Source of the DNA: Macrostomum lignano
Lineage: Eukaryota
DNA length: 39,408 bases
Direction: 5' to 3'
Assembly (NCBI GenBank): GCA_002269645.1
Contig: NIVC01004649.1
Span: 1-39,408, forward strand
In this document: piece by piece, positions 1,331 through 34,130 of the stretch
Numbering within the stretch: position 1 is the first letter of the stretch
Layout: every line of letters begins with the position of its first letter
The notes under the pieces: model-generated
What the model was told of the DNA's origin: nothing
What the model saw: the letters and a program-made list of their open reading frames with translations, nothing else
Database searches by the model: none
Made by a program: the position numbers and the translations under genes

Positions 1331-1589
1331 CGCTACTTCACCGGACAGATTTTCGTATTCGTGATATTGCGTCGTTATCTGTTCTTTGTTTAGCCCAAGG
1401 TCGTAGCCTTTATTTTCGCACTCGAGCCACTCTTCCAAAACAACCTGCCGGGGCTCGGGCACGAACTGACCGCATGGGTCTGGCTGGCTTTGCACTACTT
1501 GGGCATTAGCAGCATTGGTAATAAAGGAAAGTTCTTCAGTCTCGGGGCAGCAACGAAAGGGTTTTCTGGTCCGCTCCTTTCAATTCTTC

Positions 1590-2037
1590 CGTATTTCAGA
1601 CACCAGTCCTCTTCAATCCACAAGGCGGAGTAAATTTCACCCGAAAACTGTTGCAGAGAATCCTGGAACAGCTGGGAGCCAAAGCCTCTGTGCTGATCCG
1701 TGATTAAAATCACCCACTGGCAGTCCAATATTTTCGAATCAGTTGCTAGGAGTTCGTCTGAATGACAATGCAGTTTGTGAAACACCTTGCGACAGGTGTG
1801 CGGCATCCAGGGGGTGTTAAAGTCTTTGATCGTTGCCGGTACGTTTGCCAGGGACATGAAGCCTTCGTTGCTGATTTGAACGCTTTTGTCCCCAGTGAGA
1901 ACGATTTGAACTTTGCAGTTGTGCATTTCGGAATGTCTTACAACTCTGAATACAGCACGAGTGAGTTCATTTTCTTTTCGGCCATTGTTTTGCTTTTTCC
2001 ACAGGGAGCATTTTGTATCGATTAAAATGGTACCCTC
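1590..2037 (-). CDS. Degenerate VWA-like domain 1
   Basis: One frame reads EGTILIDTKCSL (DxSxS-like), ELTRAVFRVV, KVQIVLTG, HTCRKVFHKL, WVILITDQ, SQLFQDSLQQF, IYSALWI. This matches the VWA order of strands and helices. Confidence 0.5.
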
Positions 2038-2101
2038 GTTTCCTTTTTAAGATTTGCATCTTTATGAACTCTTGTTTCCTTACTAACGGTGCTGAAGGAA
2101 G

Positions 2102-4399
2102 TCAAATGCTGGACTTGAAACCAATTCGAGGGATCCGCTGTGAAGATAGAAGATTCCTGAGGTGGACGCTGGCTGGTCTTCTGTAAGAGCGTCGCGAGTG
2201 AATTGGAACGTGTGGGTGAGAGATCTCCACAAAAGTACCTGCTGTACTGGCTTCGTTATCTGAGTCGTCTATTCCAGCACTGAACTCTTGCATCCCAACC
2301 TCCAGCTCCGCGTCAACGTTCGATCGCGGACTAAATTTCATAACCCGACCGGTTGCTATTTCTGTCGATATATCTCCGCCAACAGCACCTTCCACTATGC
2401 TGGCATCTGACAGATGACCAAGGTGGCCCCTTAAAGGATCAAAACTGCTATCAGCTGCATCGCTTTCTTCAAAATTGGTTGCTGTCGTAGAGGCAGCACT
2501 GGGTCCTTCTGCAGCTGATGCTGGGTTTCCCTCTTTTTCTATCTTTTGTGCATGCTCTGACATGAAAGTAGAATCTGGCTTGCCCTCAGCCGTTTCTTCC
2601 GGGAACGAATCAGTCGGTATTGGCGCTTTTAGAGCTGCACCAAATGCTTCTGACTTGGCTGTTTCTTCCTGTGCAGAGGCTCCTTTACTCGCTTCTGTTG
2701 GTTTTGTTTCTTCAGTTGATTTTTCATCAGGTTCTGTCGCAGCTTCAGATTCTTCTGCATTCGGAGGTTTCATTTCGCTTTGATCTGTTTCCCTGCTTTC
2801 TTTTCTTTCTTTATCATTGATATCGCTCGTTTGGTTTGTATCACTCGGTGACTTACTTTCGGTATTCTGACCAGCTTGCTTTTCTTTTTCTGTCGGTTCC
2901 GAATCGTTTGGTGCGAAAGTTTCCTCTTCAGTCTGTAGCTGGTCAGTTTCTGATTCTTCTTGCGAATCTTTAGCGGATTCCACATCGCGAGAGGTTTCGT
3001 TCTTGTTCGTTTTCTCAGAATACGACCCCACTTCTCCTTCCTGTTCTCTTTGCTCGGAACGGGATTCTGCTGCCCCGGCTTCTTCTACTGGCTGACTCTG
3101 TTCATCACTAGTTTCCAATGGATCACTATTTGGACTGGATTCAACACATGAAGAGTCACTGTCCTTATGCTCTAAGAGCTCCTCCGCAGAAGACTCATCC
3201 TTGGGTGCCGTCCCGCCAGACTCGCTTCTTTCAGTCCCCGAGCCCGAAGGATCCGCAGACTCTGTCTGGCCAGACCCGCTTTCATTGGTTCCTGAGCCGG
3301 AAGGATCTGTAGACTCTGTCTGTCCAGACCCGCTCTCATTGGTTCCCGAGCCCAGAGGATCTGCAGACTCTGTCTGGCCAGACCCGCTCTCATTGGTTCC
3401 TGAGCCGGAAGGATCTGTAGACTCTGTCTGTCCAGACCCGCTCTTATTGGTTCCCGAGCCCAGAGGATCTGCAGACTCTGTCTGGCCAGACCCATAGCCA
3501 CCAGTCGAGGAGTCTTTTGCCTCCGACTGGCCCATGATTTGCTCGTCGGTCCCCATTGAAGGCGGAGGACTTTCAGTCAGACCGCTCTTCTCTGCATCAG
3601 CAATGGCCTCCTTGGCATTCTGAACTTTGTCCATCCACTTTTTGATTTCTTCTCCTCGCGGTCCAGCCAGGTCACTTTCAGTGGGCTGAGGATCTGAGCC
3701 TCCGCCTTCATCCAGCGAAAATCTATCAGCGTAGCTGTTAGCGATCGCCGACTTTAGCTCCTTTCTTAAATCCTCTTCCTTCGTAGTGGAGCTGAGAGCA
3801 AATCTGAATGCGCCGCTTGCATCTTTGTTGTTGATATTTGCACTATAGGACACAACTGTAGCTGCTTCTGTCCCATCCTCTTTTCCTCCAGAAATCACCA
3901 GTTCTTTCATCGGATTTTTCTCACGACTGTCCAACTCAGCTTATTTCTCGATTTCCTTCTCGTAGGCATCAATGCCGCAAATTGCCGACTGAACAAAGTC
4001 CACCCCTTTTATAATCGCGTGTGTTGCGGCACGAGCAAGCTGCAGAAGTACCTGGCAAAATTGGTAAAAAAGCCACTTGATTCCCGAGTTTGATTCGACC
4101 TTTTCCCTCATCTTCTTGATGCTGTCATCCAGCTTTTGCTCCAATTTCTTGAGAAGTTTTCGAACGCTACTGATTATTTCTTTGATTAATTTCTTTATAC
4201 TGAACGTGCTGTTCAGTCGGATGTCCCAGTCAAGAAATCTCCGCTGGTTCTCTCGTTCACCAAAGTTTAGCATTACTTCGACGGAAATAATTTTGAAGAA
4301 AGTGACCTTAAACCACGCGTAGAAGCACTTTTTGGCGGTGTCTGTCTCTATTTTGGCAGCTACTTCGATAATAAAAAATATGCTCACTTTGACGTCCAT
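2102..4399 (-). CDS. Amphipathic/coiled helices followed by an acidic D/E/S-rich low-complexity tract; in-frame TAA at 3941-3943
   Basis: KKLIKEIISSVRKLLKKLEQKLDDSIKK... is followed by EKEIEK*AELDSREK in one frame. The 610-aa E/S/D/T-rich ORF occupies the position of the midasin D/E-rich region. Confidence 0.75.
3228..3495 (-). repeat. In-frame 54-bp (18-aa) tandem repeat x5: SGSGQTES(A/T)DP(L/S)GSGTNE
   Basis: CAGACCC recurs at 3271, 3325, 3379, 3433 and 3487, a period of 54. Confidence 0.95.
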
Positions 4400-7300
4400 C
4401 AGGAATTTTAGTCCGTTGCTTTGCTCACAACAAGTGCAGCTTTGGCCCCGCCTTGCCGTCGGTGCTGCTCACCTCAAGCAGGTCGAGCAATTTAAGGGCT
4501 CTACGAGCTCACCTCCGAACTCAATCTTCTTATCTTCGCCATGAAAGGTAAAGCCTCCCCATAGTTAGCGTTCATCCGAGCCAGTTGATGGCCGCATCGA
4601 ATTTGACGCACGGTCCAATCTCATATCTTTCCGTTAAGCCTTCCGGGTTGCCTCCGCCTACGTCTTCCGGTGTTCTGACAGCTTTTTCAGTCATTTGCTG
4701 CTGACCGTCAGGACGGACGAAATTTTATTGACTCCATATTTTCATTGGCGGCGAGATAAGAAAAAAAAATGGTTGAAGCCCGGCAGCAAGAAGTCAACGT
4801 GTTCGCAAGACTTCATCAACGCCAAGAAGCTTTAGAAGATTGGAAAACCGCAGGGTCTTCTCTCGTCTTTTGAAATCGGAAGTAAGCCCCTACAGGAACG
4901 ACACGAGTAGGTTAACCAAATCTTTTTTCTTGTCATGAATCTAATGCGAAACTCAATGTCGCTCTCGAACAACTTCATGGCAGCTGCTACTTCAAAGCTT
5001 AATGCGTCTGGCGGAACGGAAATCGAGAGCTGCATCGAAGCGGAGATCAGTGTTAAAAACTTTAGACCAAAGGGCGTTGGCCAGGCCAAGTCATTTCGCC
5101 GGTTATTTTCAAGTACCTGAAATTTCTCGCTTTTTGCCACTGCTTTCGATGCTAAGCCTGCCTGAAAACTCAGCTTTGTGTTTGGCGTTTCCTAAGAATT
5201 CGGTGGGAAGATTTATATTCATCTTGGCGTCCAAGAAAAGCTTGATTATTCCTTGAGTCTTCTTTAATAACTTGCCATCTGCATCAGTCTGCTTTGATGC
5301 CTCTTCAGCTGCTTTAATGTGCACGACTCCGAAGGAGATAAAGAGCGACACGCAACCAAACAGTTCCACCGAGCCGCACTCGATGTCCAAACTAAAGCCG
5401 CTGCTTACAACGCTAAGACAGCCAGAAAAGGTTTTTCCCGTCAAGCTTAGAAAGTCGTACAGCCAATTCTGCGGCATGGTCGCCTTGAATGACAAGACTG
5501 CAAATGGTGTTTGTTTAGTTTTCTTCACGCATTCAGTCACGAAAGTTGAATCGTAGTTCATTAATTGCTTCATTTTATCAGATGCCTCGCTCAGCCTTTC
5601 ACTGCAAATCTGTTCATTCGCTTTTTTAGAGCGCAGAAGCAGCACGAGCTGTAAGTTGTTGAACACTGGGATAAGCTCGATTGATTCGACCACTTCAAGA
5701 CCGTGCCAGATTTCGCTGAGTTTCCCTTCGTATACTACGCACACTAAGTAGAAGAATTCTTTTTTCGGGAATCCACCCGTCATTCCAACCTGAAACCCTT
5801 GTGGATTTCTGCAGGCAATCGCAAACTTCTTTTCCTTTAAGTAAACTTTCACCGCGGCTCCACTTTCTTTCAGGTTGACCTCCCCAATCCGAGCAAGGGC
5901 GCTGCTGAAGCAGCTGTCCAAGGAATCCTGGTCGACAATGCTGCTGGCTTGCAGCTTGCCGTCGGATTCACCGGCATCTGCCGTGAGCTTCGGCTGAGAC
6001 TTCTTCTGAAGTGTCAGCACACCGTTCGGCAGATCCAGCACCATGCCAAGCCGCAGCTTAAACAGGTCAAACAGGCAGAACAGCTTTCCTTTCCCGAATC
6101 GCCGTCCGCAGGCGCCTTGAACGCACCGAGCTCCTCCTCGCTCTGTGGCGTCTGATTAGCTTCATTGGTATTCTTTGCTCTTTCGAGCTTCAACTTTGCT
6201 CCAAGGCAAATAATTTTAAAAGGTTTTATCTGGCCCGTAGTCTCACCAATCACTTCTAATTCGAAAGAATTCAGTGTTCTGTCGGGCTGAATCTTGGCTT
6301 CAAAATGTAAGAGCTTGAATGTCAGATCAATTTTTTTACTTAGAGATTTAACTTGCTCCTCGAGTTTGAATTTCTCGGCAACAATTGCAGCCAAATCTCC
6401 CAGGCTAAAGTCGATCTTTTGTCGAGGAACAACTATGGTCCATGGTTGCTTTATCTCCAGGGGTAGCTCGACCTTGCAGTCTACGATTCGCAGGTGCTTC
6501 ACTTCAGGTCTTCCAAGACAAAATGCGAAGTTCAGAGTCGCAAGCTTGAAACTGCTGTCAAACTTTTTATCGCTGCCCTCTTCGCCATTCGCAGACGCGC
6601 CAGCTATTTCTTGCTGTTTCTTTTCAACTCGAATCTTCAAGTCCTCGAGTCGGAGTAAGGTGCAGTTTGGAATTAGGCAAAGCCGCTGCAGTCCGAGCAC
6701 AAGTACCCAAACATCGGGTTCCACCGCCTTCGTCCAGCTGAAATGAACTCCAACATCCGTAAGTATGAGGCCAAAGTCTGGCAGACTTGTCTTTAGCACA
6801 CGGCCAAACAGCTCGTTCAGTTTGATGTCTTCCGGAAGCCTTGCAGTGCTGCCGGTTCCGTCAAAAGATTCCGGCAATTCCAACAGCCAGCACTGGCGAC
6901 CTTTTTCAGCCGGTCTGTGGAATTTCAGTTTGAGCCTACCCAGTCTAAAATCAGCCAGGGTCAGGTCAGCTGTCAGCTTGAAGTCAGACGTCGCTGAGTT
7001 GGAGTAAGTCCACAAGAAATCGATTTCAACAGATCCCAGCTTCAGTAGACTTGTGAAAGGCAATCTCAGCTCCTTGATTTTTGCCTCAAGTGTCAGTTTA
7101 TGAGTCTGACTCGCGGCGGCTTTGCTTTCTTTACCAGACTCTCCAGCTTCTGATGACCCGGCTTTGATGGAACGGCTTTCTTGGCTGCTCTTCGATGCTC
7201 CAAGCTCTGTCCTGTTCTCGTACCTCACTCTGAGCTTCTCAAATTTCACGAACTTAAGAAGTGGGACGTCAACTAGACTTGAGTTGATCTTCAGCAGTTC

Positions 7301-10264
7301 AGCAAAGGGTTTTATTAGTTCCACCAGAGTAAATTGGGCTTCAATATGAGCATTCAATGTGAACTGCATTGAGTCCTTGTCTCTTTTAACTTCTGACACG
7401 TAATCTAGGATGGGCAGAGTAAGGAATTGGATTTTTCCTTTAAGCGAGACCTGAAAGTGCCTGTCCTGATCGAAACTGGTTACTTTCATGCTGAATTCCG
7501 AATCTGTGAGCTCAATCTTCATCAGGCCTTTCTTCAATTTAATCAAGTCAATTGTCATCGCCAGCTCGCAGGTTTTCTCTTTGAAGTCTAAATAGCCACT
7601 GACGAGCTTGTCAAGATTGGTTCTGACCAGCACTTCTGGTATTGCCTCGGCTGACACTTCGAAATTCTTAGACACAAACGTTTGAAGACTGAAAGTTCCT
7701 GTACCATTTTGACGCGGCAAGACCTTCAACTCGTTGCTGGATGTCAAAACAAATCTCGAGCCATTGTCTTCACATTTTAGTAGAAGCTGACAATCAAGAA
7801 TGTCGAATACGGCATAGAAAGTGCACTTCGTTGGGCTTTCAGTTCTTATCTGCACACAGAAGGCTTTGCCTGCTAAGAGCTTTGAGACTCTGAATGAGTA
7901 GCTCTTGGTCAGAGTTTCTAGTAAGAATCTCTTTAAGCTGTTGTCGAAATTCCACTCGATATCAACAGCTGTTTCGGTAAACTGCATTACTGATGGAACA
8001 CCGTAGTTGGACAGGTCAACACCCCGCCCCATGCATTCTGCCAGCAGGGACACTACGTCAGTACTTGAGTAGTGCGTTTTCAGATCGCACTGACTGACTG
8101 CCCAATGCTGGTCGTTGATGGGGTAGGAGGCGGACAGAGTTGGAGTTTTCAGCTTCGCGCAGTTTCCCAGCTCCAGAACCATTGACAGACTTGGATAGCG
8201 GAGCATTTCGTCAATGAGGGTGTGCACCTCTCCTCTGCTGGTGCTCAGCTCTATTTCTGTAAGAGTCAACATAGGGCTGAGGCTGACGGGCTTCATATTA
8301 AGCATCATTTCTAATTCTTTTGGCTTCGTCCAATCGTTCCACTCCATCGAGTAGTTGCATTTTTCAACCATGACTCCTCTAGTGGCTTCATTCTCTCGCG
8401 ACAGCCGGCTCGCTACAAGTACAGAAAGGTCGAACGGCTCAATAGATTTGTCATCGGTTTGTAGCTTCCAACAAGTTCTTTTTTCTGCATTCCTATCCGC
8501 TGTCTGACACTGCAACTTGTTCTCATGCTCACACAGTAGAATGCTGAAGTGTCCTAAGTTCTGTCCGTGCAGAATGAGATCTCCCTCAATCAGGCTGCCG
8601 CACCATTTCTGATGCGCGGCCTTCCTTCCATGGTTCCGCAACACCATGCTGACTGACCGCAGCACAAGCTGGCTATCAACCTCGGAGTGAATGTCAGAAG
8701 AAGCTTTTGCTGTTAACTTTAGTTTCCATTTTGATATGTCAATGCGAATTTCCACTCCGCTGATTGGCACATTCGGGAACGGCTGCTGCACCTCCAAGTT
8801 CATGTCCTTCATTAGCTTGAGCAAGAGGCTTCCTCCATCATCTTTCGCCTGACTGGAAGAACAAAGCGTTAGTTGCAGCTGCTTGGACTTACCGGCCCCT
8901 GTTTCTTGTGCTCGTGTTATTTTTAAATCAAACTCGATGCCTAAAAGCGACAGCAGATCCATCTTTCCTTTTATGCGCACGACCATGTCCGACGGCTCCT
9001 TGCCCTCGATGACCAGCTGGGCCTCGTAAAACTGCATACTCGCTGTGTATTGATTCTGCATCTCGAATTTGGAGATTTGCGCTTCCATGCTGACTTGGCC
9101 TGATGAGTCAACCCGAAAGCTCTCCACACGATTGATCTGAGACTTTTCTGACAAGCCTGCCACCTCCTCGTCGGAGGCTTTGAAGATTTGCTTGATAAAC
9201 ATACGAAGATTAACTTTTTTCGTTTCCGCTATCTTCGATTGAAACTGAAGTTCGGCGATAATATCCGATGAAACTCTCGCGAGCTTGATGCCGAACATGC
9301 TCAAAACTCCCTTCACCTTGCACTTCCAATGCCCACTCGACTCGTGAAGATGCAGCTCTACTTCCCCTATGCTGAAAGGAAAATTTCGATTAGGTAGTTC
9401 GAGCGCTCGGTTTTCTGGCGCACTTATTATGACTCGCGCATCAGACTGCTGCTCTTTGATTTCCATGCTTTGTACCGATAAAGTCAAGACCTGCTTAGCA
9501 GAAAACCAACTTATGAAGGCCAGCGACTCAGGGACCTCTTCCAAGCAAAAAGAGATTATGCTGATTATCTTTGTGCTGCACTCAGCCTCAAAAGGGTCGA
9601 TTTTTAGCAGCGTTTGCGACATGTCGATTGTTCCTTTAAAAGTACTTTTCTTTTTTGATTCCTTAACCTGCATCTTGCCCGTTAGTAAAACAGTTTTCGT
9701 GTGTTGAATTTCCAGTTGAACGTCTTCGAAACTGAACAACTTGAAAGCCGGCCATCCATAATTGATTTTTTCATCGAAAGTCAGCTTAAAGAAGTTCGAG
9801 TCTTCAACCGCAGCAATCATAATTCTGTTGCATATTTCTTTTGCTCTTTCGTTCCAATATGGAATTTTGGTGGGCAGAAAATTTCTGAAAATAAAAACAT
9901 CGCTCGGTTTCAAGAGTTTGATTTGAAAGAAATCATCTCCCGAGGAGTTGGACTGAAGGCTGAGGTCGACCTCGTTTCCTTTTCTTGTATCTCCTGAGCT
10001 AAGCACAGCTTTTAGTTTGGCAGAGAAAACTCGCCTCTCCATATCAATAGAGAGTTTTCCGTGCAGATCCGACATCTTTACTTGGATTCCAAGAAACCGA
10101 TGGCAGTCAGCTGACTCTACAGCAAAACTGATATTTGCGAAGTCTTTTGAGCCACGGAGTAACAGTTTGTACCGCTGAGCTACCAATTGAAACTCATTGG
10201 TTTTGCTGCTTCCAATTTTGAATCTGGTATTGTGATAACACTCGCTTATTGCTCTAGTTAAATC
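4400..10264 (-). CDS. About 1,900-aa beta-strand-rich repetitive region of the giant protein (frameshifted near 6090, near 5120 and repeatedly in 4400-4930)
   Basis: ORFs of 1417, 311 and 102 aa show alternating hydrophobic/polar strands punctuated by short helices (VNLRMFIKQIF, FSLQTFVSKNF, FTLVELIKPF, IKLNELFGRVL, FSLGDLAAIV). It is in frame with the upstream part once the 950-bp insertion is removed. Confidence 0.7.
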
Positions 10265-11214
10265 CAATGGAGAGTTTACTACTTCTGTTTGCTACTTCTG
10301 GGTCAACTCCAGTGTTTTCCAAAATGAAGTTCTGGCCATCAGCTCCTGCACTGCAGAGCTTCTCGCCACTGGCGTTACTGGTAAGAACATCATTTTCCAT
10401 TCGGACAGCCAAGCTGCCTTGCACGCCATCAGTGGCTGCAGCACCAACTCTGCTACAGTCCTTGACTGTATCAAACTCCTCAATGTGTTGGGTTCCGCCA
10501 ACAAAATTACCCTTAAGTGGGTTCCGGGGCATGTGGGGATCCGAGGAAATGAGTTGGCTGACACCCTTGCAAAAGTTGGTGCCTCCGGCTCCTCTCTCGG
10601 CCCCGAACCTCTTGTCCCGATCCCTGGCTGTGTCATCGACTCGCGCATCAAAGCGTGGATCAGGACTCAGCACCGCTCGACTTGGGCGAACCGCACGAAC
10701 TGCAGGCAATCCAGAGGCGCTGTCCCTCAGCCCTCTCACCAGCTCCGGAAGCTCCTCTTGCGCCTCTCGCGCAGAGACATCCGGGCTGCCACCATGACCC
10801 TCTCTGGTCACGGCTGCTTCTCCAGGCACCAGTACCTGCAGGGCAACGCCACCAACGCCACCTGTAGTTTCTGCAACTCAGGTGACGAAACCGCTGAGCA
10901 TTTCGTCAGCATCTGTCCCGCCTTCACGCGGGCCAGACTCACTTACCTCGGGCCACACACATCTATTACTGAAGCGTGCAAACCCGAAAACTTTAATCAG
11001 CTCATGCGCTACCTTCGGGCCACCCGCAGGGCTGAACTCTCCTTTCCAGAGAGCACCATAGCTGCTGGCGACACTGGGGGACCTCCCTGGGCGGCGCCAA
11101 CCCTCCGTCCATAGCGACGCGTCGGCCGTTCAGGGACTAGCGGAATGGGCGCCCGCGCCTTCCCGCTGTGTCCCCTCCGGGACAGCCCTGCAGCTAAGTC
11201 AAGTAAGTCAAGTC
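10265..11214 (+). mobile_element. 5'-truncated non-LTR retrotransposon (LOA/R1/I-like clades): RNase H, CCHC knuckle, 3' UTR and (TAAGTCAAG)2 tail
   Basis: An open frame from ~10260 to 11114 reads SVFQNEVLAI...FHSDSQAAL...LKWVPGHVGIRGNELADTLAK (non-LTR RNase HI) and LSGHG...CSFCNSGDETAEHFVSIC (CX2CX8HX4C). It is GC-richer than its flanks. Deleting these 950 bp restores the host frame EKEQTDLTRAISEC. Confidence 0.9.
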
Positions 11215-13248
11215 TGTTTGCTCTTTTTCATTGCTAGAAAGATGAACTGGAATGTTTCCCTCCGCAAAGAGACCAATTCTAGCCTTGAATTCCCACATCG
11301 GCTTTCCTTTCTTTACTGTCATACTGAAGTTGCTGTCCGCGAAGTAAACATTTGCACTTTCACCGCTACCGTCTTTCAGCTGGTACTCTATGAGCTCGGG
11401 ATCCGAGATAGCAGTAGTTCTGCAGAGGAACTGGTTGAACTTCAATGATTTCACTACACTTGGCCCATCGAAATGTCTCAAAAATTTTGTAGGAACAGCA
11501 TTCTCCAAGCCAACACTTCCTTGTTCCAAATGAATATTAACAACAATGTTAGACCCACCGTATGAGCAGCAGAATTCCCAACTGAAATTAAGTGCTTCCT
11601 TTTCATTACTGGTAAGGTCACCGACTACTTTCCACAGGAAGTCTCCAGCCTTATTGTTGCAAAGCAAGTGCCGACACTTCAGTTCACTCTCGAATGGCAA
11701 AAGTATGTTGGTAATAGCAGGCTGAAAGTGTTCGGAGTGGGACAGCTTCACTTTTGCATGAGCCTCTGGATCCCTCTGCAGTCGGCTGATGGCACAGCCC
11801 ATGCTGCTGGTTACGCTCTGGATTTCATCGCCTACAAATTGGACAAGAGCTCTCTCTGCAGACTTCGACTTGCATTTCATTAAGACGATAATATCCATTA
11901 GCTTTCTGTCATGAATTGCCTCAACTTTTTGAACGGATTTTAAATTGAATCTGGGCGAGAGAATTCGTCCAGACATGTAGTACTCCTCTTTGTACTTCAA
12001 CGACTTCGACATCATTTCGCCCACCTGACATCTCAGCGTCTCATCAAAAATGTCTTCCATGAGACTCGACGCATCAAGCAGCATTCCATTTTCAATAAAA
12101 AATAAAATGTGTCTCAGATCTCTTGCGGTCACTTGCTCCCTTTTTGCCTTTTCTGACGTTTTAAAATTGTTGATGAGACGTCGAACGATGGAAGCAATTT
12201 CGTTGTTGCATAGAGTTCCATCTCTTAGCGGCGCGAACAGGTCAGGAAAGCAGTCCGTTTGCGGATCCAACTTGGGACAGAAAATCTCAATGCAGCGGTT
12301 GCGGAAAGATTCAGACAGCTGAAAGCTGCTACTTCTACCGATTGTTGCTGTGCAGATGAGAGCAAATCCAGGTTTCGGATCGATTCCGCCCTTCGGTCCG
12401 TCAGTGAGAGCCACTTCATGGACGTACAATCGCTGGCCCGACTCGCCAATGGAATTGAGCCTCTCGATCACCTCTGGTCTCGCGTGGTCAACATTGTCCA
12501 GCAGGATCCAGTTACCATTCTTCATCGACTTTACTAGAGGCCCGTCAACAAACTGAAAGCTGTTTTTGGAGCCACTGCTGACCGGGGAGAAGCCGCCAAT
12601 GAGGTCGCAGACGTCAGTATCAGCATGAACCGCAACAGTGACCAGCTGCTTGCTGCACCGCCGAGCCAGCTCCGCAACTGCGCTGCTCTTTCCGGAAACT
12701 GGAGGTCCCAGTAGAAGTAAGATTTTACCACTTCCAATCGATTGTTGCAGGAGACGCACGAGTCTGTCGGACGCGTCGCAAGGATTCAGCCTCTGACTTG
12801 AGTGTAAGAAGTCCCCGCGGCTGGTAAAAGCTCTCTTAGCTGTTTCTTCTGGAGACTCGCAAACAGCTAGTTTGCTTATCAGCTCCTGGGTTTCGGAACT
12901 ACTGGAAGAACTACATTCGCAGTATACAATACCAAGAGCTTCTTTCACAGTGTTATGCGCGTTCAACAAGCCGACAACCTTTTCTACATCTCTAAGGTTG
13001 AATTTACGATCAAAGTGGCCAGACGGGCATGCGTGATCTTTACAGCTAGCAACCATTTGCCAGTGAAATGAAGCCACTGCTTCAGTATTCGGACCAAATT
13101 CATTTCGAAACTTTTCGATTATTTCTTGCGTCTCTTTCTCTCCGATGACGTCCACGCTTACCTCCGTTAGCAGCTTTGACAGAGCTGGCGGCAGCTCCTG
13201 GCGTCCTCCGCCAGAACTTGCCGGGTTCATCGCGCACACAAACTGCAG
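11215..13248 (-). CDS. Start of the very large last exon: end of AAA5, AAA6 and post-ring segment, cut by a retroelement
   Basis: LQFVCAMNPASSGGGRQELPPAL resembles the midasin ATMNP motif. AAA6 has GPPVSGKS, FQFVDGPLVKSMKNGNWILLDNVD and SFRNRC. The ORF stops at 11194, inside the retroelement tail. Confidence 0.85.
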
Positions 13249-13386
13249 CTGCAATGCGACATGTTATAGAGAACAGAGTTTTACAGATTACACTTGACTA
13301 AACTTTCTGTATACAACTAGGAAACCCTAATGATGAATAACTCAATTTTCTATAATTTCAACAGCGTTGTGTCAATTGCTTCTTAC

Positions 13387-13451
13387 CTTTTTCAGGGAAT
13401 ATTCCTTAGAGTTCACAACCATCTTTGTGCCTTTAGGATGCTTCATGATCC
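13387..13451 (-). CDS. 65-nt exon within AAA5 (GIMKHPKGTKMVVNSKEYSLKK)
   Basis: Acceptor ttattttAG| at 13452 and donor AAG|GTAAG at 13387/13386. Phases 1 and 0 fit both neighbouring exons. The next acceptor is ttgcAG| at 13249. Confidence 0.75.
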
Positions 13452-13540
13452 CTAAAATAATTTCAGAGAACACTGGCAATCAAGCAAATGACATAAAACG
13501 ATAAAATGTACTTCTATTAAAAGCGATTTGTTCTGCTTAC

Positions 13541-16500
13541 CAATAATTGTGCTCAGAACATTGCTGGGAGCCAAATTAATTTCGTCGAATAAAATAACGG
13601 CTCCTTGATATTCATCGGGACTTTTCGGTTTTCTGCCCGCCATTCGAGCAGAGTCGGCCACTGCTGCCTGCTCCAGAATTGCACCCTCTCTGAATTGAAA
13701 CGTCATTTTGGTAGCTTTAGTTCCCGAATTCGAGTGCGCCGTTGGAACAAATGACCCAAATAGGTCTTCTTGAGAAAGATCACTAGAGCAGGAAATTCTG
13801 ATGAACTTCTTTTTGAGAACCGATTCTGCAAATATCCTCGTGATTTGGGTCTTGCCAACTCCCGGAGGTCCAACGAGGTTGACCACTGATTCAGTGTAAT
13901 GAGCAATTAGCAAGTGGCTAAGTACTTCTTTTGCCCGTCGGGTTACTGTCAGATCCTGACCCACTCTTTGAAACTCCTGTTCTGAGAATAGCGATGCTTC
14001 AGACAGAATTTCGTTTGGACTGTCACTTTGTGGAAATTCCTGCTTCAGGGCGAGACTAAAAGGTGATTTGCAACATTTTGGAGGAATTTTTGCAAATGAT
14101 GCCATGTTGACTAGGCTCTTCACACTCAGAATTCCATTTGAGAGTTTCAAGGCTTCGCTAAGGCCACGGTCGATGTCTTCCGACAAAGAGGAAGGGATAG
14201 ACGATTCTCTGCTCAGGATATCCCGAAAGAAGACTTCAGCCTCGCTGCCTCTGCTCACATCTGTCAGCTGAGGATCTCGCACATGAATCACTGTGTACCG
14301 CGACCTCATTGAGGGCGAGATGTCTTTGTCCGTTGGCAAAGAGATTGTGGCTATTAGTTTAAAGTTCACGCTCAAAGCGATCGGAGCATCAAACTGATGA
14401 GGATGAGTAAAGCTGGGCTCTAACTCGGTCACGCTGTTGAGGCACTCAATAACTGCCTGATCAGCAAGGTTAATGTCTCTCAGGAAGGCAATTCCACCGA
14501 AGCGAATATTTCTCATGATTCCCCTCTCACAGAAAGGAAAAATCTGAGATCCCGATGAGCAAAGGGACAAGTTTTGCAATGTTTCATGCGCGAACGCTGC
14601 ATCAGAGAGGAGGCATTGCTGAGGACAGCCGATAAAATCAGCTGAGTGCTGCTTCAGTATGTCGCAAAACTGACTTGACTTGCAGCTCTTCCATCTCTCT
14701 ACTGCAGGTGATTGCTTGAATGGGGCTGGTAGTTCGTTTGTAAGTCGATTTCTAAGCTTGGAGCAAGTGCTTTCGAAGTACGATGTGCATTTACTGAAGC
14801 TCTTTGCCTTGCTCGGATACCGCGTCATCAGCAACTGTGCAGCTGGATTGGCGCAAGTCTCTTCGAAGGACTCCGCTGAGTGCGGCTCGATCCCGCCAAA
14901 CAGATCTCGGGTCTCGGTTAGATCCGACATGTACAAAGTAGTCAGTCTGCAAAGCTCAGGAGCACCAAAGTCTACGATTTGAGTCAGGTGGCGCACCATC
15001 GTTGCTTTAAAATTCGTCCGGCCTTCGAGCACCACGGGCTCAGCGAAGTGGAGCGCCAGTGCAAGCTTGCAAAGGCTCAGCTGTTCGCTCCTTATCATGG
15101 GCTGCGGAAGGCTTTTCTGCAGCGCTTTCAGCTTCACAGACACAGTTGCCGACACAGCTGCATCTCGAAAGAAAATTTCAAAGAGCCAATCGTTTTCGAC
15201 GCATTCAATTTTGCAGTCCAAAACTGCTGCTTGAGGTGGAAATAGGTCCATCAAAACGGCAACGTGTAGCTTCACCTTTTCCAGCCAATTTTCTGCGCTC
15301 AAATCTTCCGTAATGGTGAGTCGTCTCACAAGCTTTAAAAGAGTTCTCAAGGTTGTTGAGTTCGATTGGTTGTGGTGACCCTGCAAATATTTAACAAGCT
15401 CTTGGATTCGAGTTCTCATCTCCGAGCTTGATAGCTCGCTACTAAAGAGATTTTTTGCCACATTTTTCATGAATGACCTTGCTCCGTGGTATAGTCCTGA
15501 TAGACTTTTTATTTCGCTGCTGGGTTTGTTCTGCTTCATCGAGTCTGCAAAACATGCTACTTTTCCGTAGAGGATGTCGACGATCTCATCGCGAGTGTAA
15601 TCTGGCACCGAGTACTTCACCAGTCTGGCCAGCACAGGTTCTGGAAGGCACTGTCTTCCAACATATTCTGTCGGATTTTGCGTACCCACAAAGGCAAACT
15701 CCGGGTGAACATCAAGCCATTGTTGTCGAATCGAGCAACGAAATTTGCTGCCACCGCTCAGAAGAGGCGTCAGATAGCTCGTGACTTCGGGCGATGCCAA
15801 ATTAAGCTCGTCCGCAATAAATATGCTTCCTTCTCTCATGGCCTTGCTCAGCGGCCCTTCTTTGAACTTGGCCTTCGTTCCATCAGGCAGATAGCAGCCC
15901 ATTAGGTCAGTAACAACTGTGTCCTTGTTGAACAGAAATATAACTGGCCTGGCCGCATAGCCTAAATGATTGCTCACTAGCTTTACAAGCGATGTTTTGC
16001 CTACTCCGGAGTGCCCTTCCAGCAGCACGGGAATCTTCATTCTGAGGAGAACCATTAACAGGCCAGCCAGTTTCTGTCGAGACTCCCCAAGAGTGTACAC
16101 TGGACTGTCAAGAATAACATTCTGTGTCCATTCGTGTTTGCATTCTACGGACGACTCAAGCACTAATTCTGCAATGCTTTCAACTACTTGAAACCAGTCA
16201 TAAAGAGAATAATTTTTGCCATCTAAAGCGATAGGCTTCTTGGCCAAGTAATTGGTTCCGTTTACGAATTGGGCTATCTTCCCGATCGAGGCGTAAATCA
16301 GTTTACATTTTATCGTCGAATCTTGTTCGCGCATCGGCAAGTGACGGAACATCAAGTCCAGAATTCTTCGAGCATTGTTTCTGCTCATTCGATTCGCGAT
16401 AAAGGATTCGACATCCGAGCTCAATATGTTTTCCGGCACGTCAAATATGACGAAGCGACTGAGGAACGACTGGGCCCAACTCGAATAGTTCGTTCTGACG

Positions 16501-16719
16501 CTGCTGACTGAATGTGGCGAGCACAAAGAAGCTTGGATCAACCGGCACCATCTTGCCGTCAATTAGATAGCGGCGCTCTGGCCCTGTCTCCAATAGTGCG
16601 TTCAGAGACTCCAAGACTGCCTTTTCTACCAAGTTAATCGACCTGAGTACCAGGCATTTTCCCTCTTTGATAGCTCGAGCTACTGGTCCGTCAACCCATT
16701 GGAATACGGCTCCTGAATC
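13541..16719 (-). CDS. Exon: rest of AAA2, AAA3, AAA4 (with insert), most of AAA5; one +1 frameshift near 16475
   Basis: AAA3: GHSGVGKT and FIADELNLA. AAA4: GRTNFKAT and FLRDINLA. AAA5: GPPGVGKT and ILFDEINLA. Removing one base from TTGGGCCC (16472-16477) joins FVLATFSQQRQNELFEL to (A/G)QSFLSRF. The exon ends at donor G|GTAAG (13541/13540). Confidence 0.85.
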
Positions 16720-16819
16720 CTAAAATGCAACATCAAAAATGATGTCAAAGATAAAAAGATAAGGTACTCGTACATGAGTTTTCGAGAGCTACGGTAAATA
16801 AATAAGTACAAAAGCTCAC
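16720..16819 (-). other. 100-bp phase-0 GT-AG intron
   Basis: GTGAG...ttgcattttAG. Splicing gives GQFQPQ|DSGAVFQWVDGPVARAIKEG, which matches the MoxR/midasin F.W.DGP motif. Confidence 0.85.
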
Positions 16820-19411
16820 CTGGGGCTGAAACTGTCCCACCAGATCATCAGTTGATGTTTCAGAATGGCAATAGTATTCCTCAAGTTCGATGTTTCTCTT
16901 CTTTGCCCAAATCCAAATGGCGGTGAATTTTCCCGAGAAGCTTTCCCCGACCAGCATGCCGGGCCTCTTCGTGTCATGACAGAGATCAAGATACTCCATA
17001 GTGTCGCTGTAGGTGCTGAGTACTGCCACTTCGCCAATTCTCAGGTCGGATAGATTTTGGGACACCTGCTTGGGTCCGAATTCCATTTGCAAACTTTCTT
17101 GAACAAGCGTATGAGTTTCTTCAGCTTGCGAAGCAGTATTTTCGCTGTGCCGAGAAAAAAGACACATGAGCCGGTTTGTCACTTCCTCGGGCTTAGAATT
17201 GATAATAATGTCTTGAGCATGCAGCAAATCTCGAAGAGTAACATGCAGTTTATCTTTGAACTTCCTGTAGATTGAAATCAGTTTATCGGCCATTTGAGTA
17301 TTGCCGTCTGAGCATCTGCCTTTTAATATTTTTTCGACATCATCATCAGGCAGCTTTGAAAAAGTTAAGCGGACAAAGTGGCTCATAAGAGACTTTGAGA
17401 AACGAAGACTGTCGAATCCAAAAACAACGACATTCGAATTTTGACAAAGGAAAAGGCGAAAGTTCGGGTGGCGTCGGTAGCACAGACATCCATTCTCCGC
17501 ATCTGACTGGCCGGCGATGAGGCTGTCCCGAATTTGCAGCATCCCTGTGTCCAGAACGTCCTCCAAAACCCGCAAAACAGCGTCACTCGCCAGATTGGCC
17601 TCGTCCAACAGAAGCCAATAGCCGTCCCTGACTGCTCGGGTAAAGATGCCTGGCTCGAACCGGAACTGCGATCCGGATCCCGAACCAGCGAATCGAACAC
17701 TCCCGAGTAGGTCTGCCGCGCTGGTGTGTGGTGACAGGGTAAATCGCAGCAGCGGGGCGCCGGAGATGGCAGCGCAATACCGAACTGAGAACGTCTTTCC
17801 TGTGGCTGGTTCGCCTTCAATAAAGACGGGCATGTTGGAGTTGATCAGCAGTAATAGGCGCTCAACATTTTCTTTGGTCCGGTCAGTAAATACGAAGTTC
17901 ATTGTTTCGTGGCTCTCAACCGCTTGTTTCATGCTTTCTGAAATTTCCGATGGAACACTTTCTAGACTTTGTCTTGGCAGTCTTATTCGCAAGTGATCGT
18001 CGAAGAGCTCCTCAACTTCTAGCTCTCTATTTTCGTGGATACTCAGAAAGAGCTCCTGTACAAAATAATTTTCTTGAGGTAGCTTTCCTTGGAGTTTCAA
18101 ATGCTTCGTAAGCTTCTCGTGGCTGAACTCAGACATCAGAGTATCCATGTACTTTTTGTCACTCCTTTTCCCTGCTTTGATGAATGGCAGAAATCTGTTT
18201 TTGTCTTTATTTGCTTTAGTTTGTTGTTGCTTTTTCGCAGTCGGCTGTGTAATACCAACAGGTGTGGGTAGCGGTCGACTAGACCTCACGCTCCACCTAT
18301 TGCTTTTGCTTTTCTTAGCCACCTGCTGCTCCAGAACAGTCACCTTTTGATCCACTGAGCCTATGATAATGTCAAGACATCGCGCGTCCAACACCTCATC
18401 TGGCAAAGCGACCTCATCGGAATCTTGCTTTAACTTCCGGATCTGAATCACTGACTCTTCGGATGGGTTCACCAAATAGTAGGCGTTCTCGAGAGGATCC
18501 GTGGCCAGCCTTATTGGAGCATCGAGTGCTGCTTCACCGGCCTGAGTGACGTCCCAGTCAACAGACAGAGCAATCACATCGGTCGCGGTTAAGCTGTCGA
18601 CAATACAGCCCTCGGCTTTGAAAATGGCATCGATTCGGTCACTCTGGTGACCAAGCCGGGCGGTGCATAACTTCCAAACCCGCTGATGCAGAACGACCAT
18701 GCGAAGGAGAAGCTCATCATTCAAGTTAACAAAGACAGCGCCTTTAACATCCGATCGACAATAGATGGTTGGAGTTTGTTCTTTCAGGGGTACTAGATAG
18801 AATTGCATTCGGTTCGAACTGTCCTTAGCAAATATTGTGGCGAAATCGGAATTCTCTGAAACCTGATAGTGAAGCACCGATCTCAGGCTCAACTTGTGCT
18901 CTAATCGAAGGTCATGCTGGTCGAAACCAGCTTGATTGTTCTTGTAAACCCTGATTCCAGCCCAGTGGTGAATCAGAGTGCTTTCGGTTACTACAGCAAA
19001 AACATCGGTGCTAAGCCACACTAGCTTTAGCGCTTTCTCAGCCTGCAACGAGTGCACAGCAACGGGAGACCATGGTGAGCTCGAGGCAAAGTCGAATACT
19101 AGTACTCGATCGGCAGAGTTTCTTCGAACCACAACCGCAAGCCTCGAAGTCGTATCGTTCGGTACGGTGTGAACAATGGCGTCATTGCCACACTCGGGTA
19201 TGACGAATCGGCGAAGCGTGTAAGATTCCGGGTCAAAGACAGTCGTGCAGTTCACTTCAGAGCCCTTCAGTCCCAGAATATCCGGTAAACTGTACGAACT
19301 GTGGATAACGGCCGAAGTCTTCGTGAAGAACACATCGTGCAGTTTATAGTTCTTGTCAGGACCGACCACGTCAAGTCTGAAGGGGAAGTTATCCCCTTCC
19401 ATGCCTGAGAG
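16820..19411 (-). CDS. Exon: clathrin-terminal-domain-like propeller, AAA1, and the start of AAA2
   Basis: AAA1 has Walker A GEPATGKT, FRFEPGIFTRAVRDG and Walker B WLLLDEANL. AAA2 has Walker A GESFSGKF and STDDLVGQFQPQ. The exon ends at donor CAG|GTGAG (16820/16819). Confidence 0.85.
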
Positions 19412-33854: not shown

Positions 33855-34130
33855 CTTTGTAAAATTTAACGAATATTCATGTCCCAACCCCCTTTGCAAA
33901 ATTTGCAAATAATCATCGTTCCAATGTCCTCTTTGTAAAGTTGAATGAATATTCATCTCTCCTCGTCCCCCTTTGTAAAATTTAATTAATATTTATCTTT
34001 CCCTACCGGCCCACCCCCATGGCCTTTGTAACATTTGGCAAATATTAATCTCCGCCCATAGGCCTACCCCCTTTGCAAATTTGGGGAATATCCACCTCCC
34101 ATCCCCCTTTGTAAAATTAGCGATATTTCG
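33855..34130. repeat. Degenerate ~38-50-bp tandem repeat, ~7 copies (CTTTGTAAAATTT..CGAATATT core plus C-rich spacer)
   Basis: The CTTTG(T/C)AAA core recurs seven times, separated by variable C-rich segments. Confidence 0.75.

What the first reader, a model, noticed from the sequence alone, without database searches (positions are those of the whole stretch)
12280..17820. Alternating live/dead ATPase sites with matching arginine-finger pattern
Seen: AAA1 (GEPATGKT/LDE), AAA3 (GHSGVGKT/ADE) and AAA5 (GPPGVGKT/FDE) are intact. AAA2 (GESFSGKF/LRS), AAA4 (GRTNFKAT/LRD) and AAA6 (GPPVSGKS/LDN) are degenerate. The R-finger segments read AAA1 SLMSHF (no R), AAA2 SFLSRF, AAA3 VLARL, AAA4 SMRSRY, AAA5 ALSKLL (no R), AAA6 SFRNRC. 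If module n+1 completes site n, as in dynein-type rings, then dead modules 2, 4 and 6 keep the Arg for live sites 1, 3 and 5, while modules 1 and 5 lost it facing dead sites 6 and 4. This coherent pseudo-3-fold pattern differs from Rea1/Mdn1 (central modules active). It argues for selection on a functional enzyme rather than random decay.
Basis: partly seen in the sequence, partly recalled or inferred. Interest (0 to 1): 0.75.

Follow-up and report, generated by a model that had tools for sequence, protein, structure and literature searches.

The report
Midasin paralogue with alternating ATPase sites
A giant flatworm gene encodes a six-module motor ring, related to the ribosome-assembly factor midasin, in which every second ATP site is dead; relatives from ciliates to rotifers share this layout, so it marks an undescribed branch of the family, although this particular gene copy looks damaged.

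Summary
On the minus strand of a Macrostomum lignano contig, a spliced gene encodes six AAA_5 modules. AAA1, AAA3 and AAA5 have intact Walker A, Walker B (DE) and sensor-1 Asn. AAA2 and AAA4 are dead. AAA6 keeps Walker A but has LDN. The Arg-finger residues read H, R, R, R, L, R for modules 1 to 6.

On this one sequence the pairing is not significant (p=0.2). It is conserved in 19 representatives of a distinct clade (100/100 bootstrap against canonical midasin) that includes Owenia, rotifers, Paramecium, Paulinella, Hondaea and Ectocarpus. The fingers facing the live sites (R2, R4, R6) are Arg in 19/19, 19/19 and 16/16. R5, which faces the destroyed site 4, is absent in 18/18.

The finger column is the RxRF motif tested by mutagenesis in S. 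pombe Mdn1. In an AlphaFold model it lies at the end of helix H4.

- AAA6 Walker A is canonical.
- Loss of R1 and LDN in AAA6 are also canonical-midasin states.
- SFLSRF of AAA2 lies behind a 1-nt frameshift.
- This copy also carries a LINE insertion in a coding exon and an in-frame TAA. The sister copy has none of the three.

pN/pS between the two copies is 0.23. I found no published description of this family.

The parts
199..19402 (-). Whole gene (about 6000 codons): N-terminal propeller, six AAA_5 modules, long beta-rich linker, D/E-rich region and a MIDAS-like C-terminus. NCBI annotates part of it as BOX15_Mlig003175g3 (PAA46920.1, partial).
   Evidence: ORF chain on the minus strand. The window is the whole 39,408-nt contig that carries PAA46920.1. 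It is collinear with sister copy L001 from window 24692 down to 132. The 3' limit is approximate.
18353..19402 (-). N-terminal all-beta domain, clathrin-heavy-chain-terminal-domain-like propeller. The start codon is at 19402.
   Evidence: AlphaFold model has pLDDT 66 and pTM 0.68 and is all strands. The top 30 or so Foldseek PDB hits are nearly all clathrin terminal domains, with E down to 7e-9 and TM about 0.5. The domain is shared with P0021, P0022, P0023 and P0025. Pfam finds nothing.
17375..17815 (-). AAA1 core, live: Walker A GEPATGKT (17815-17792), Walker B LLLDE (17614-17600), sensor-1 QN (17449-17435). The R-segment is SLMSHF (17392-17375), with His in the Arg-finger position.
16452..16948 (-). 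AAA2 core, dead: GESFSGKF (16948-16925), LVLRS (16653-16639), no sensor-1 Asn. The R-segment SFLSRF (16469-16452) supplies the finger for site 1. The core spans intron 16720-16819.
   Evidence: The sister copy reads the same residues in a single frame.
16470..16477 (-). 1-nt frameshift inside AAA2. The window has TTGGGCCCAG where the sister copy has TTGCCCCAG.
   Evidence: This is not a simple homopolymer slip. Whether it is a real mutation or an assembly error is unresolved.
15621..16016 (-). AAA3 core, live: GHSGVGKT (16016-15993), FIADE (15821-15807), GTQNP (15686-15672). R-segment PVLARL (15638-15621).
   Evidence: The model puts Arg282 of the modelled ORF at the end of H4, just before strand 5.
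14295..15023 (-). AAA4 core, dead, with a large H2 insert: GRTNFKAT (15023-15000), AFLRD (14489-14475), ATIS (14354-14340). The R-segment SMRSRY (14312-14295) supplies the finger for site 3.
13168..13871 (-). AAA5 core, live: GPPGVGKT (13871-13848), ILFDE (13595-13581), CAMNP (13236-13222). The R-segment ALSKLL (13185-13168) has no Arg. The core spans introns 13452-13540 and 13249-13386 and micro-exon 13387-13451.
   Evidence: PAA46920.1 uses the same splice junctions.
12292..12708 (-). AAA6 core: Walker A GPPVSGKS is intact (12708-12685), Walker B is ILLDN without the catalytic Glu (12507-12493), and there is no sensor-1 Asn. The R-segment SFRNRC (12309-12292) supplies the finger for site 5.
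10294..11212 (+). 5'-truncated LINE-like insertion inside the coding exon that follows the ring. It has an RNase H ORF at 10419-11114, a (TAAGTCAAG)n tail and a 10-nt target-site duplication AGCAAACAGA at 11222-11213 and 10293-10284.
   Evidence: Pfam RNase_H. The junctions were read. The insertion is absent from sister copy L001.
6101..10283 (-). Linker exon of about 1395 codons, beta-rich, with no detectable relatives.
   Evidence: No Pfam hit, no PDB hit and no in-family hit. pN/pS against the sister copy is 0.24.
2105..3940 (-). D/E/S/T-rich low-complexity region with 54/108-nt repeats, preceded by an in-frame TAA at 3941-3943.
   Evidence: The TAA is absent from L001. pN/pS is about 1.0.
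549..1160 (-). MIDAS/VWA-like C-terminal domain: GKKLSIRGLMNWFMTNGTSNKIWLQRHRVTERRIAVGIAV-SLTSS. The DxSxS metal site is degenerate, and there is a frame break near 815-825. Boundaries are approximate.
   Evidence: An HMM built from 25 canonical midasin C-termini hits the sister-copy translation at i-E 3.7e-7. phmmer hits the C-terminus of canonical-type midasin P0067 at 1.8e-5 and Paulinella P0024 at 8e-10. Pfam and PDB phmmer give nothing.

Best explanation
The region encodes the ATPase ring of a midasin-like giant protein. It belongs to an old, so far undescribed sister family of canonical midasin, here called family X.

The six AAA_5 modules of one chain form a pseudo-hexamer that behaves as three catalytic pairs:
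- The odd modules (AAA1, AAA3, AAA5) carry Walker A, Walker B Asp-Glu and sensor-1 Asn. They bind and hydrolyse ATP.
- The even module that follows each of them (AAA2, AAA4, AAA6) is catalytically dead but supplies the arginine finger, from the end of its helix H4, to the live site before it.
- The interfaces 2|3 and 4|5 are dead in this protein.
- Site 6|1 probably still binds nucleotide, because Walker A is intact, but it has neither a catalytic Glu nor a finger.

The ring sits between a clathrin-terminal-domain-like propeller and a long linker, an acidic region and a MIDAS-like tail. By analogy with midasin the protein is presumably an ATP-driven remodeller of some macromolecular assembly. 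Its target is unknown.

What is shown: the motifs, their family-wide conservation, the clade, the finger position and the domain order. What is inferred: which sites actually hydrolyse ATP, the pairwise mechanics and the cellular role.

The copy in this window (g3) is probably a recently damaged duplicate or a truncated version. Sister copy g2 lacks its three lesions.
For: Motifs and coordinates.

Midasin-type ring: AAA_5; PDB phmmer top hits are Mdn1/Rea1 at E about 1e-90; Foldseek on the AAA3-AAA5 model gives Rea1, Mdn1 and dynein on top.

Finger assignment: it aligns to the RxRF motif mutated in Mdn1, and finger n+1 serves site n (PMC5116814; PMC6286127). The model places it at the end of H4.

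Family: HMMER against 1.84 billion representatives found Owenia (38% identity), a Logan protein (42%), and proteins from Paramecium, Paulinella, Hondaea, Ectocarpus, Rotaria, Adineta and Brachionus.

Motif table over 19 representatives:
- Walker A plus Walker B DE intact: site 1 in 16/18, site 3 in 18/19, site 5 in 19/19.
- Arg present: R2 19/19, R4 19/19, R6 16/16.
- Site 4 is dead in all, and R5 is absent in 18/18.
- Site 2 never has the catalytic Glu. R3 is kept in 13/13 where Walker A2 is intact and in 3/6 where it is destroyed.
- Pooled over representatives, live sites have the finger in 50/50 cases and other sites in 31/56 (Fisher p = 4e-9). The sequences are related, so this is not an exact probability.

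Clade: the X|canonical split has 100/100 NJ bootstrap on 790 columns.

Ancestral layout: odd modules resemble odd modules and even resemble even in both families, which suggests an ancestral (odd, even) x3 arrangement.

Constraint: pN/pS between the two M. lignano copies over ring and linker is 0.23 (30 nonsynonymous and 37 synonymous changes; binomial p = 6e-9).

Tail: the C-terminus is MIDAS-like.
Against: - There is no biochemical or expression evidence for any member of the family.
- This copy has a frameshift in AAA2, a LINE insertion with a target-site duplication in a coding exon, an in-frame TAA and further frame breaks. It may not make a full-length protein.
- The assembly is noisy: 41 indels against 159 substitutions between the copies, mostly 1-nt homopolymer differences. 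Not every lesion can be trusted, and not every one can be dismissed.
- R3 is kept here although site 2 is dead. R1 is Arg in 12/18 relatives although site 6 is non-catalytic. The rule 'a finger is lost when it faces a dead site' is therefore a tendency, not a law.
- The number of independent loss events is small (about 5), which gives roughly 0.03 by chance.
- The motif columns themselves were among the 790 columns used for the tree.
- Whether M. lignano also has a canonical midasin was not tested.
Confidence: 0.72

Rival explanations
1. The pattern is random decay. The locus is a dying duplicate of midasin whose motifs have eroded haphazardly, and the apparent coherence with the arginine fingers is chance.
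For: On this sequence alone the finger/site match has p = 0.2. The locus carries a frameshift, a LINE insertion in an exon and an in-frame stop.
Against: The same states recur in 19 representatives from animals, ciliates, rhizarians and stramenopiles at 25-45% identity. R2, R4 and R6 are never lost in 54 observations. pN/pS between the two M. lignano copies is 0.23. The sister copy lacks all three lesions.
Confidence: 0.04
2. It is simply the fast-evolving canonical midasin (MDN1/Rea1 orthologue) of Macrostomum, still working in pre-60S ribosome maturation with a rewired ring.
For: The overall order of ring, linker, acidic region and MIDAS-like tail is that of midasin. UniProt auto-names the Owenia, Brachionus and Hondaea relatives 'Midasin'. 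I could not check whether M. lignano has a second, canonical midasin.
Against: It groups with family X rather than canonical midasins, 100/100. Family X shares derived states across eukaryotic supergroups: GPTxxK in AAA4, LDN or worse in AAA2, no R5, DE in AAA1, and no AAA2 H2 insert. It has an N-terminal propeller that canonical midasin lacks. The MIDAS DxSxS is degenerate here. From general knowledge, midasin is essential and near-universal in eukaryotes, so the family X species should also have a canonical copy. This was not tested here.
Confidence: 0.08
3. The window copy is an expressed but truncated or non-functional allele (a young pseudogene). The biology resides in the paralogous copies g2/g1, and nothing about enzyme function can be concluded from this locus itself.
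For: The LINE insertion with a 10-nt target-site duplication brings a stop 6 codons after the junction. The TAA at 3941-3943 lies in a cluster of 6 substitutions. The AAA2 frameshift is not a homopolymer slip. The NCBI model needs a non-GT-AG 'intron' to skip the LINE.
Against: The ring ORFs are otherwise intact. pN/pS of 0.23 leaves little time for neutral drift. Many indels in both copies are clearly assembly noise: L001 has private homopolymer frameshifts where the window is intact, and the window has 18 deletions in 700 nt where L001 is intact. This rival concerns the copy, not the pattern, and is compatible with the best explanation.
Confidence: 0.45

Closest known systems
Midasin (Rea1 in S. 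cerevisiae, Mdn1 in S. pombe, MDN1 in human)
   Same: One chain carries six AAA_5 modules, followed by a long linker, an acidic region and a C-terminal MIDAS-type domain. It is the best sequence and fold match. Finger n+1 serves site n. AAA6 keeps Walker A with LDN. AAA4 has an H2 insert. Odd modules resemble odd and even resemble even.
   Different: Canonical midasin has sites 2-5 live and site 1 dead (xEDxD), and R5 is present (VNRF). Here sites 1, 3 and 5 are live, sites 2 and 4 are dead, and R5 is lost. There is no AAA2 H2 insert: Walker A to Walker B spacing is about 70 residues against about 180. There is an extra N-terminal propeller. The MIDAS metal site is degenerate in Macrostomum. 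The clade is separate.
Dynein heavy chain motor domain
   Same: It is a single-chain six-AAA ring of the same AAA+ clade with a mix of catalytic, binding-only and dead sites. The fold match is at E about 1e-14.
   Different: From general knowledge, dynein hydrolyses mainly at AAA1, with AAA3 and AAA4 regulatory, AAA2 binding only and AAA5/6 dead. This is not an alternating pattern. Dynein has a stalk and microtubule-binding domain and an N-terminal linker, and no MIDAS tail.
RNF213 (mysterin)
   Same: It is a giant single-chain protein with a dynein-like six-AAA core in which only some modules are active (PMC7311170, listed).
   Different: Its active modules are adjacent (AAA3 and AAA4, from general knowledge). 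The ring lies mid-protein and is followed by an E3 ligase module. No sequence hit to it was seen here. The RBR-like Cys motif in the window is an out-of-frame artefact.
F1/V1-ATPase alpha3beta3 and other trimers of heterodimers (functional analogy only)
   Same: Catalytic and non-catalytic nucleotide-binding units alternate around a six-membered ring, and the non-catalytic unit gives the arginine finger to the neighbouring catalytic site (general knowledge).
   Different: The fold class is different (RecA-type, not AAA+) and the subunits are separate polypeptides. No homology is implied.
MoxR-type AAA+ with VWA partners (CbbQ/CbbO, NorQ/NorD)
   Same: The AAA_5/MoxR module type is the same, and it hits single modules of the window protein. 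An AAA+ ring works together with a VWA/MIDAS domain.
   Different: These are homohexamers of identical, all-active subunits, and the VWA domain is on a separate protein.

Membership tests
AAA_5 / MoxR-dynein-midasin clade of AAA+ | Pfam AAA_5 module with Walker A, Walker B, sensor-1 and an Arg finger at the end of H4 | tested here: met
   AAA_5 hits above the cut-off on AAA1, AAA3, AAA5 and AAA6. AAA2 and AAA4 are recognised only through alignment to homologues. The secondary structure of the model fits.
Midasin-type single-chain ring (broad sense) | Six tandem AAA_5 modules in one polypeptide, collinear with those of Rea1/Mdn1 | tested here: met
   MAFFT aligns all six modules collinearly, with invariant Gly/Lys/Arg columns. 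PDB top hits are midasins. Foldseek top hits are Rea1.
Midasin-type single-chain ring (broad sense) | Linker, D/E-rich region and C-terminal MIDAS domain | tested here: inconclusive
   The D/E-rich ORF is present. The C-terminus matches a canonical-midasin C-terminal HMM at i-E 3.7e-7 and one canonical-type midasin by phmmer at 1.8e-5. Pfam VWA and PDB phmmer are negative. DxSxS reads AV-SLT. In this copy an in-frame TAA separates the tail from the ring.
Canonical midasin (MDN1/Rea1 orthologues) | Walker A/B and Arg fingers conserved for sites AAA2-AAA5; AAA1 and AAA6 without Walker B (PMC5116814, PMC6286127) | tested here: not met
   AAA2 (GESFSGKF/LRS) and AAA4 (GRTNFKAT/LRD) are dead. AAA1 has DE. 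R5 is absent.
Canonical midasin (MDN1/Rea1 orthologues) | Large H2 insert in AAA2 (the auto-inhibitory element in Rea1, PMC6286127) | tested here: not met
   Walker A to Walker B spacing in AAA2 is 68 residues here and 67-84 in family X, against 172-193 in canonical midasins.
Canonical midasin (MDN1/Rea1 orthologues) | Groups with canonical midasins in a tree | tested here: not met
   Its closest relatives (P0021, P0022) fall in family X, which is separated from 52 canonical sequences with 100/100 bootstrap. The window sequence itself was not in that tree; its placement rests on 38-42% identity to P0022 and P0021.
Canonical midasin (MDN1/Rea1 orthologues) | Role in pre-60S maturation through Ytm1/Rsa4 UBL binding | not testable with these tools
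   No functional data are available.
Family X (undescribed midasin sister clade defined here) | AAA1 Walker B = DE; AAA2 without catalytic Glu; AAA4 P-loop GPTxxK-type and Walker B xED/x[KR]D; R5 not Arg; AAA6 LDN | tested here: met
   The window shows every state. GRTNFKAT is a variant of GPTxxK.
Family X, short subgroup (Macrostomum, Owenia, P0021, Paramecium, Paulinella, P0025) | AAA2 P-loop Ser/Thr replaced by a hydrophobic residue; Walker B fully lost | tested here: met
   The subgroup has 100/100 bootstrap.
Family X, short subgroup (Macrostomum, Owenia, P0021, Paramecium, Paulinella, P0025) | N-terminal clathrin-TD-like propeller | tested here: met
   Checked for the window, P0021, P0022, P0023 and P0025; Paulinella P0024 was not in the N-terminal alignment.

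The most novel reading that the evidence does not exclude
Family X is an ancient sister of midasin, possibly as old as the last eukaryotic common ancestor, that has gone unnoticed. It would be a fourth kind of single-chain AAA+ ring machine, beside dynein, midasin and RNF213. It runs as a covalently linked trimer of heterodimers with three catalytic and three finger-donor modules. It uses a clathrin-box-type propeller and a MIDAS-like tail to act on a non-ribosomal target, and it has been lost from the usual model organisms.
Probability: 0.45. Interest if true: 0.8.

Novelty: new variant of a known kind. Interest (0 to 1): 0.64.

Why it matters
Single-chain AAA+ rings (dynein, midasin, RNF213) are the textbook cases for asking why a hexameric motor keeps some ATP sites and kills others. 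Family X gives a natural experiment with a strict 1-3-5 layout, in which the arginine fingers have co-evolved with the sites they face.

Odd modules resemble odd and even resemble even in canonical midasin too. This suggests that the midasin-type ring arose by triplication of a two-module unit, and that family X has specialised that unit into a catalytic half and a finger-donor half.

The family occurs in experimentally tractable species. Paramecium, Brachionus and Macrostomum all allow RNAi. The questions of what a three-stroke midasin-type motor does, and on what substrate, are therefore directly testable.

Databases currently label these proteins 'Midasin', 'Dynein heavy chain', 'MoxR-like ATPase' or 'unnamed protein product'. 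Functional transfer from Rea1 to them is likely to be wrong.

Tried and rejected
- **The search for homologous proteins.** The first search gave only a near-identical UniRef model and canonical midasins. The second (AAA2 region) and the third (a family-specific AAA4 profile) returned nothing useful and did not even recover the query's own relatives. The family was found only by the index-free HMMER search.
- **The look-up of encoding contigs on P0001.** Not on record.
- **Pfam.** Nothing on the linker, D/E region, C-terminus or N-terminus, even at E <= 1.
- **PDB phmmer.** Nothing on the linker or C-terminus.
- **RBR/parkin-like Cys motif** (CSACLTCLSCGLAWCWIC) at the end of the 1417-aa ORF. 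Rejected: E = 7.9, and it is read out of frame after an indel cluster.
- **My first reading of 5140-4470 as an intron.** Rejected: the sister copy has a continuous 689-aa ORF there, and the window has 18 single-base deletions.
- **Using P0001 as independent confirmation of the AAA2 frameshift.** Rejected. By my reading together with P0001, its 'LVSSYFDV' is explained by a g2-like sequence with one extra T and a 40-nt pseudo-intron, so it does not share the window's lesion.
- **Literature searches** for a midasin paralogue or midasin-like family. Nothing relevant.
- **Whole-ring structure prediction.** Impossible because of the 1200-residue cap. The tools return no coordinates, so finger-to-P-loop distances could not be measured.

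Full report
**What the window is.** The window is a whole 39,408-nt contig of the Macrostomum lignano (flatworm) Mlig_3_7 assembly. NCBI places the partial protein PAA46920.1 (BOX15_Mlig003175g3) on a contig of exactly this length, and that protein is identical to my translation. The finding lies on the minus strand in a gene with short GT-AG introns. The ring exons are 19402..16820, 16719..13541, 13451..13387 and 13248 onward. The gene continues through a 1395-codon linker exon, further coding sequence, a D/E-rich region and a C-terminal domain, down to about position 200. That is about 6000 codons in all.

**Checking the observation.**
- Pfam AAA_5 scores above its cut-off on AAA1, AAA3, AAA5 and AAA6.
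- AAA1, AAA3 and AAA5 have GxxxxGKT, hhhhDE and a sensor-1 Asn.
- AAA2 (GESFSGKF / LRS) and AAA4 (GRTNFKAT / LRD) have lost both motifs.
- AAA6 has a canonical Walker A (GPPVSGKS) with LDN, so 'degenerate' is only half right.
- SFLSRF of AAA2 is read in another frame than the rest of AAA2. A 1-nt frameshift lies at 16470-16477.
- For this one sequence, the chance that all three needed fingers are among the four that survive is 3/15 = 0.2. The observation alone is therefore suggestive and no more.

**Is the finger column right?**
- phmmer against the PDB puts S. pombe Mdn1 (4.9e-90) and yeast Rea1 (1.7e-87) on top.
- Kawashima et al. 2016 mutated this motif in Mdn1. They state that finger n+1 serves site n, that R2, R3, R4 and R6 have two arginines and R5 only one, and that the second Arg is the critical one. 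The canonical columns in my alignment read RSRF, RNRF, RNRF, VNRF and RNRx, which matches exactly.
- Sosnowski et al. 2018 place the finger on helix H4 of the following module.
- An AlphaFold model of the uninterrupted ORF AAA3-AAA5 (pLDDT 71.5, pTM 0.72) puts the Arg of ARL and of SRY at the C-terminal end of H4, immediately before strand 5. Its best PDB fold matches are Rea1, Mdn1 and dynein.

The first refutation test is therefore passed. One limit remains: no coordinates were available, so no distances could be measured.

**Are the states conserved in homologues?**
- An index-free HMMER search of 1.84 billion representatives found true relatives well above the canonical midasins. These are a Logan protein (42% identity), Owenia fusiformis CAH1795989.1 (38%), and then proteins from Paramecium, Paulinella, Hondaea, Ectocarpus, Rotaria, Adineta and Brachionus, plus several metagenomic proteins.
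- In reference-anchored alignments with about 55 canonical midasins, 19 representatives share the window's layout.
- Walker A plus Walker B DE are intact at site 1 in 16/18, at site 3 in 18/19 and at site 5 in 19/19.
- The fingers that face these sites are Arg in 19/19 (R2), 19/19 (R4) and 16/16 (R6).
- Site 4 has a destroyed P-loop (GPTxxK type) and Walker B in all, and R5 is never Arg (0/18).
- Site 2 never has the catalytic Glu. Where its Walker A survives (13 sequences) R3 is always Arg. Where Walker A is destroyed (6 sequences, including the window) R3 is Arg in only 3.
- Site 6 is LDN nearly throughout, and R1 is Arg in 12/18.
- A neighbour-joining tree on 790 columns separates these sequences ('family X') from canonical midasins in 100/100 bootstraps. 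The subgroup holding Owenia, P0021, Paramecium, Paulinella and P0025, to which the window protein is closest, also has 100/100.

The second refutation test is therefore passed. The fingers track the state of the site they face, most strictly for the live sites.

**What is inherited and what is new.**
- Canonical midasin has site 1 dead (xEDxD), sites 2-5 live, site 6 with Walker A but LDN, and R1 not conserved. The window's AAA6 state and its missing R1 are therefore not peculiar to it.
- The states that define family X are a live site 1, dead sites 2 and 4, a lost R5, and no H2 insert in AAA2 (Walker A to Walker B spacing about 70 residues against about 180).
- Module-by-module Smith-Waterman scores show that odd modules resemble odd modules and even resemble even in both families. 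The ring seems to descend from a two-module unit repeated three times. Family X has turned that unit into a catalytic half and a finger-donor half.

**The rest of the protein.**
- The first 350 residues fold, with moderate confidence (pLDDT 66), as a beta-propeller. Its best PDB matches are clathrin heavy-chain terminal domains, with E down to 7e-9. The domain aligns with the N-termini of four relatives.
- The C-terminus is recognised by an HMM built from 25 canonical midasin C-termini (i-E 3.7e-7) and by phmmer against one canonical-type midasin (1.8e-5). It shows the GKRLN...KIWLRR...DDSxS entry motif of the MIDAS domain, but with the metal-binding DxSxS replaced by AV-SLT. Another family member keeps DNSGS.
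- The domain order is thus that of midasin, with a propeller added.

**State of this gene copy.**
- A second copy (g2, contig NIVC01004179.1, locus L001) is collinear with the window over the whole gene at 98-99% identity.
- It reads AAA2 as ...NELFELPQSFLSRF... without a frameshift.
- It lacks a 919-nt LINE-like fragment. In the window that fragment sits inside the coding exon just after the ring, flanked by a 10-nt target-site duplication.
- It has AAC GAG ACC where the window has an in-frame TAA.
- The two copies differ by 41 indels against 159 substitutions. Most indels are single bases in homopolymers, and each copy is frameshifted where the other is intact. Much of the frame damage is therefore assembly noise.
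- The LINE insertion cannot be assembly noise, and the TAA, which lies in a cluster of substitutions, is unlikely to be. This copy is therefore probably a young pseudogene or a truncated allele.
- Over ring and linker the copies differ by 30 nonsynonymous and 37 synonymous changes. This gives pN/pS = 0.23, with p = 6e-9 against neutrality. The gene was under purifying selection for most of the time since the duplication.

**Most likely mechanism.** The protein has a single-chain pseudo-hexameric ring with three catalytic interfaces (1|2, 3|4, 5|6). At each, an odd module provides the P-loop, Walker B and sensor-1, and the next even module provides the arginine finger. The other three interfaces are structural. 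At site 6, and at site 2 in many relatives, the interface probably still binds nucleotide without hydrolysing it. By analogy with midasin, ring closure would be transmitted through the linker to a tail domain that holds a substrate. The motifs, their conservation and the domain order are shown. The activity, the mechanics and the cellular target are inferred.

**Novelty.** Two full-text literature searches found no description of a midasin paralogue family. Databases label its members Midasin, Dynein heavy chain, MoxR-like ATPase or unnamed protein product. I file it as a new variant of a known kind. It is a member of the midasin-type ring machines in the broad sense, but it fails three tested defining features of canonical midasin: live sites 2-5, the AAA2 H2 insert, and tree position.

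Noticed in passing
window 10294-11212 (+ strand element); TSD at 11222-11213 and 10293-10284: A 5'-truncated LINE-like fragment sits inside a coding exon of the gene. It has an RNase H ORF, a (TAAGTCAAG)n tail and a 10-nt target-site duplication AGCAAACAGA. It is absent from the sister copy. The NCBI gene model skips it as a non-GT-AG 'intron'.
   Followed up: yes
window 3941-3943: An in-frame TAA lies between the linker part and the D/E-rich part, in a cluster of 6 substitutions within 15 nt relative to the sister copy (which has AAC GAG ACC GAG CTG). I have no explanation for the cluster.
   Followed up: partly
window 4414-5112 and 6085-6360: There are 18 single-base deletions in about 700 nt relative to the sister copy, which keeps a 689-aa ORF there. 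A second indel cluster lies near 6085-6360 and creates a spurious RBR-like Cys-rich ORF end (CSACLTCLSCGLAWCWICRTVC). This looks like local assembly noise.
   Followed up: partly
window 19590-20579: A 20-nt unit is repeated about 50 times, starting about 190 nt upstream of the start codon. It gives long artefactual ORFs on the + strand.
   Followed up: no
window 30035-30541 and 3215-3493: A 21-nt x 24 tandem array lies in intergenic sequence. 54/108-nt repeats lie inside the D/E-rich coding region and encode SGSGQTESxDP units.
   Followed up: no
window 18353-19402 (-): The N-terminal domain of the protein is predicted as a beta-propeller whose closest solved folds are clathrin heavy-chain terminal domains. 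Canonical midasin has no such domain.
   Followed up: partly
window 26878-28275 (+): An unrelated neighbouring ORF of 465 aa is proline-rich and, by eye, has C2H2 zinc-finger motifs. It shows no frame problems.
   Followed up: no
window 34000-38000: An AT-rich tract (GC 0.28-0.31) stands out against about 0.47 in the rest of the window.
   Followed up: no
proteins P0049 (4471 aa) and P0040 (7557 aa): These two midasin-type hits are built of near-identical two-module units repeated along the chain (for example WITLEEFNLA / PLFLDELNLS alternating). They look like living examples of the (odd, even) pair from which the six-module ring seems to derive.
   Followed up: no
window 16820-19402 vs L001: The first exon (2.6 kb) differs from the sister copy by one substitution and one single-base indel. 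Synonymous divergence in the downstream exons is 1.5-2.7%. This suggests recent gene conversion at the 5' end.
   Followed up: no
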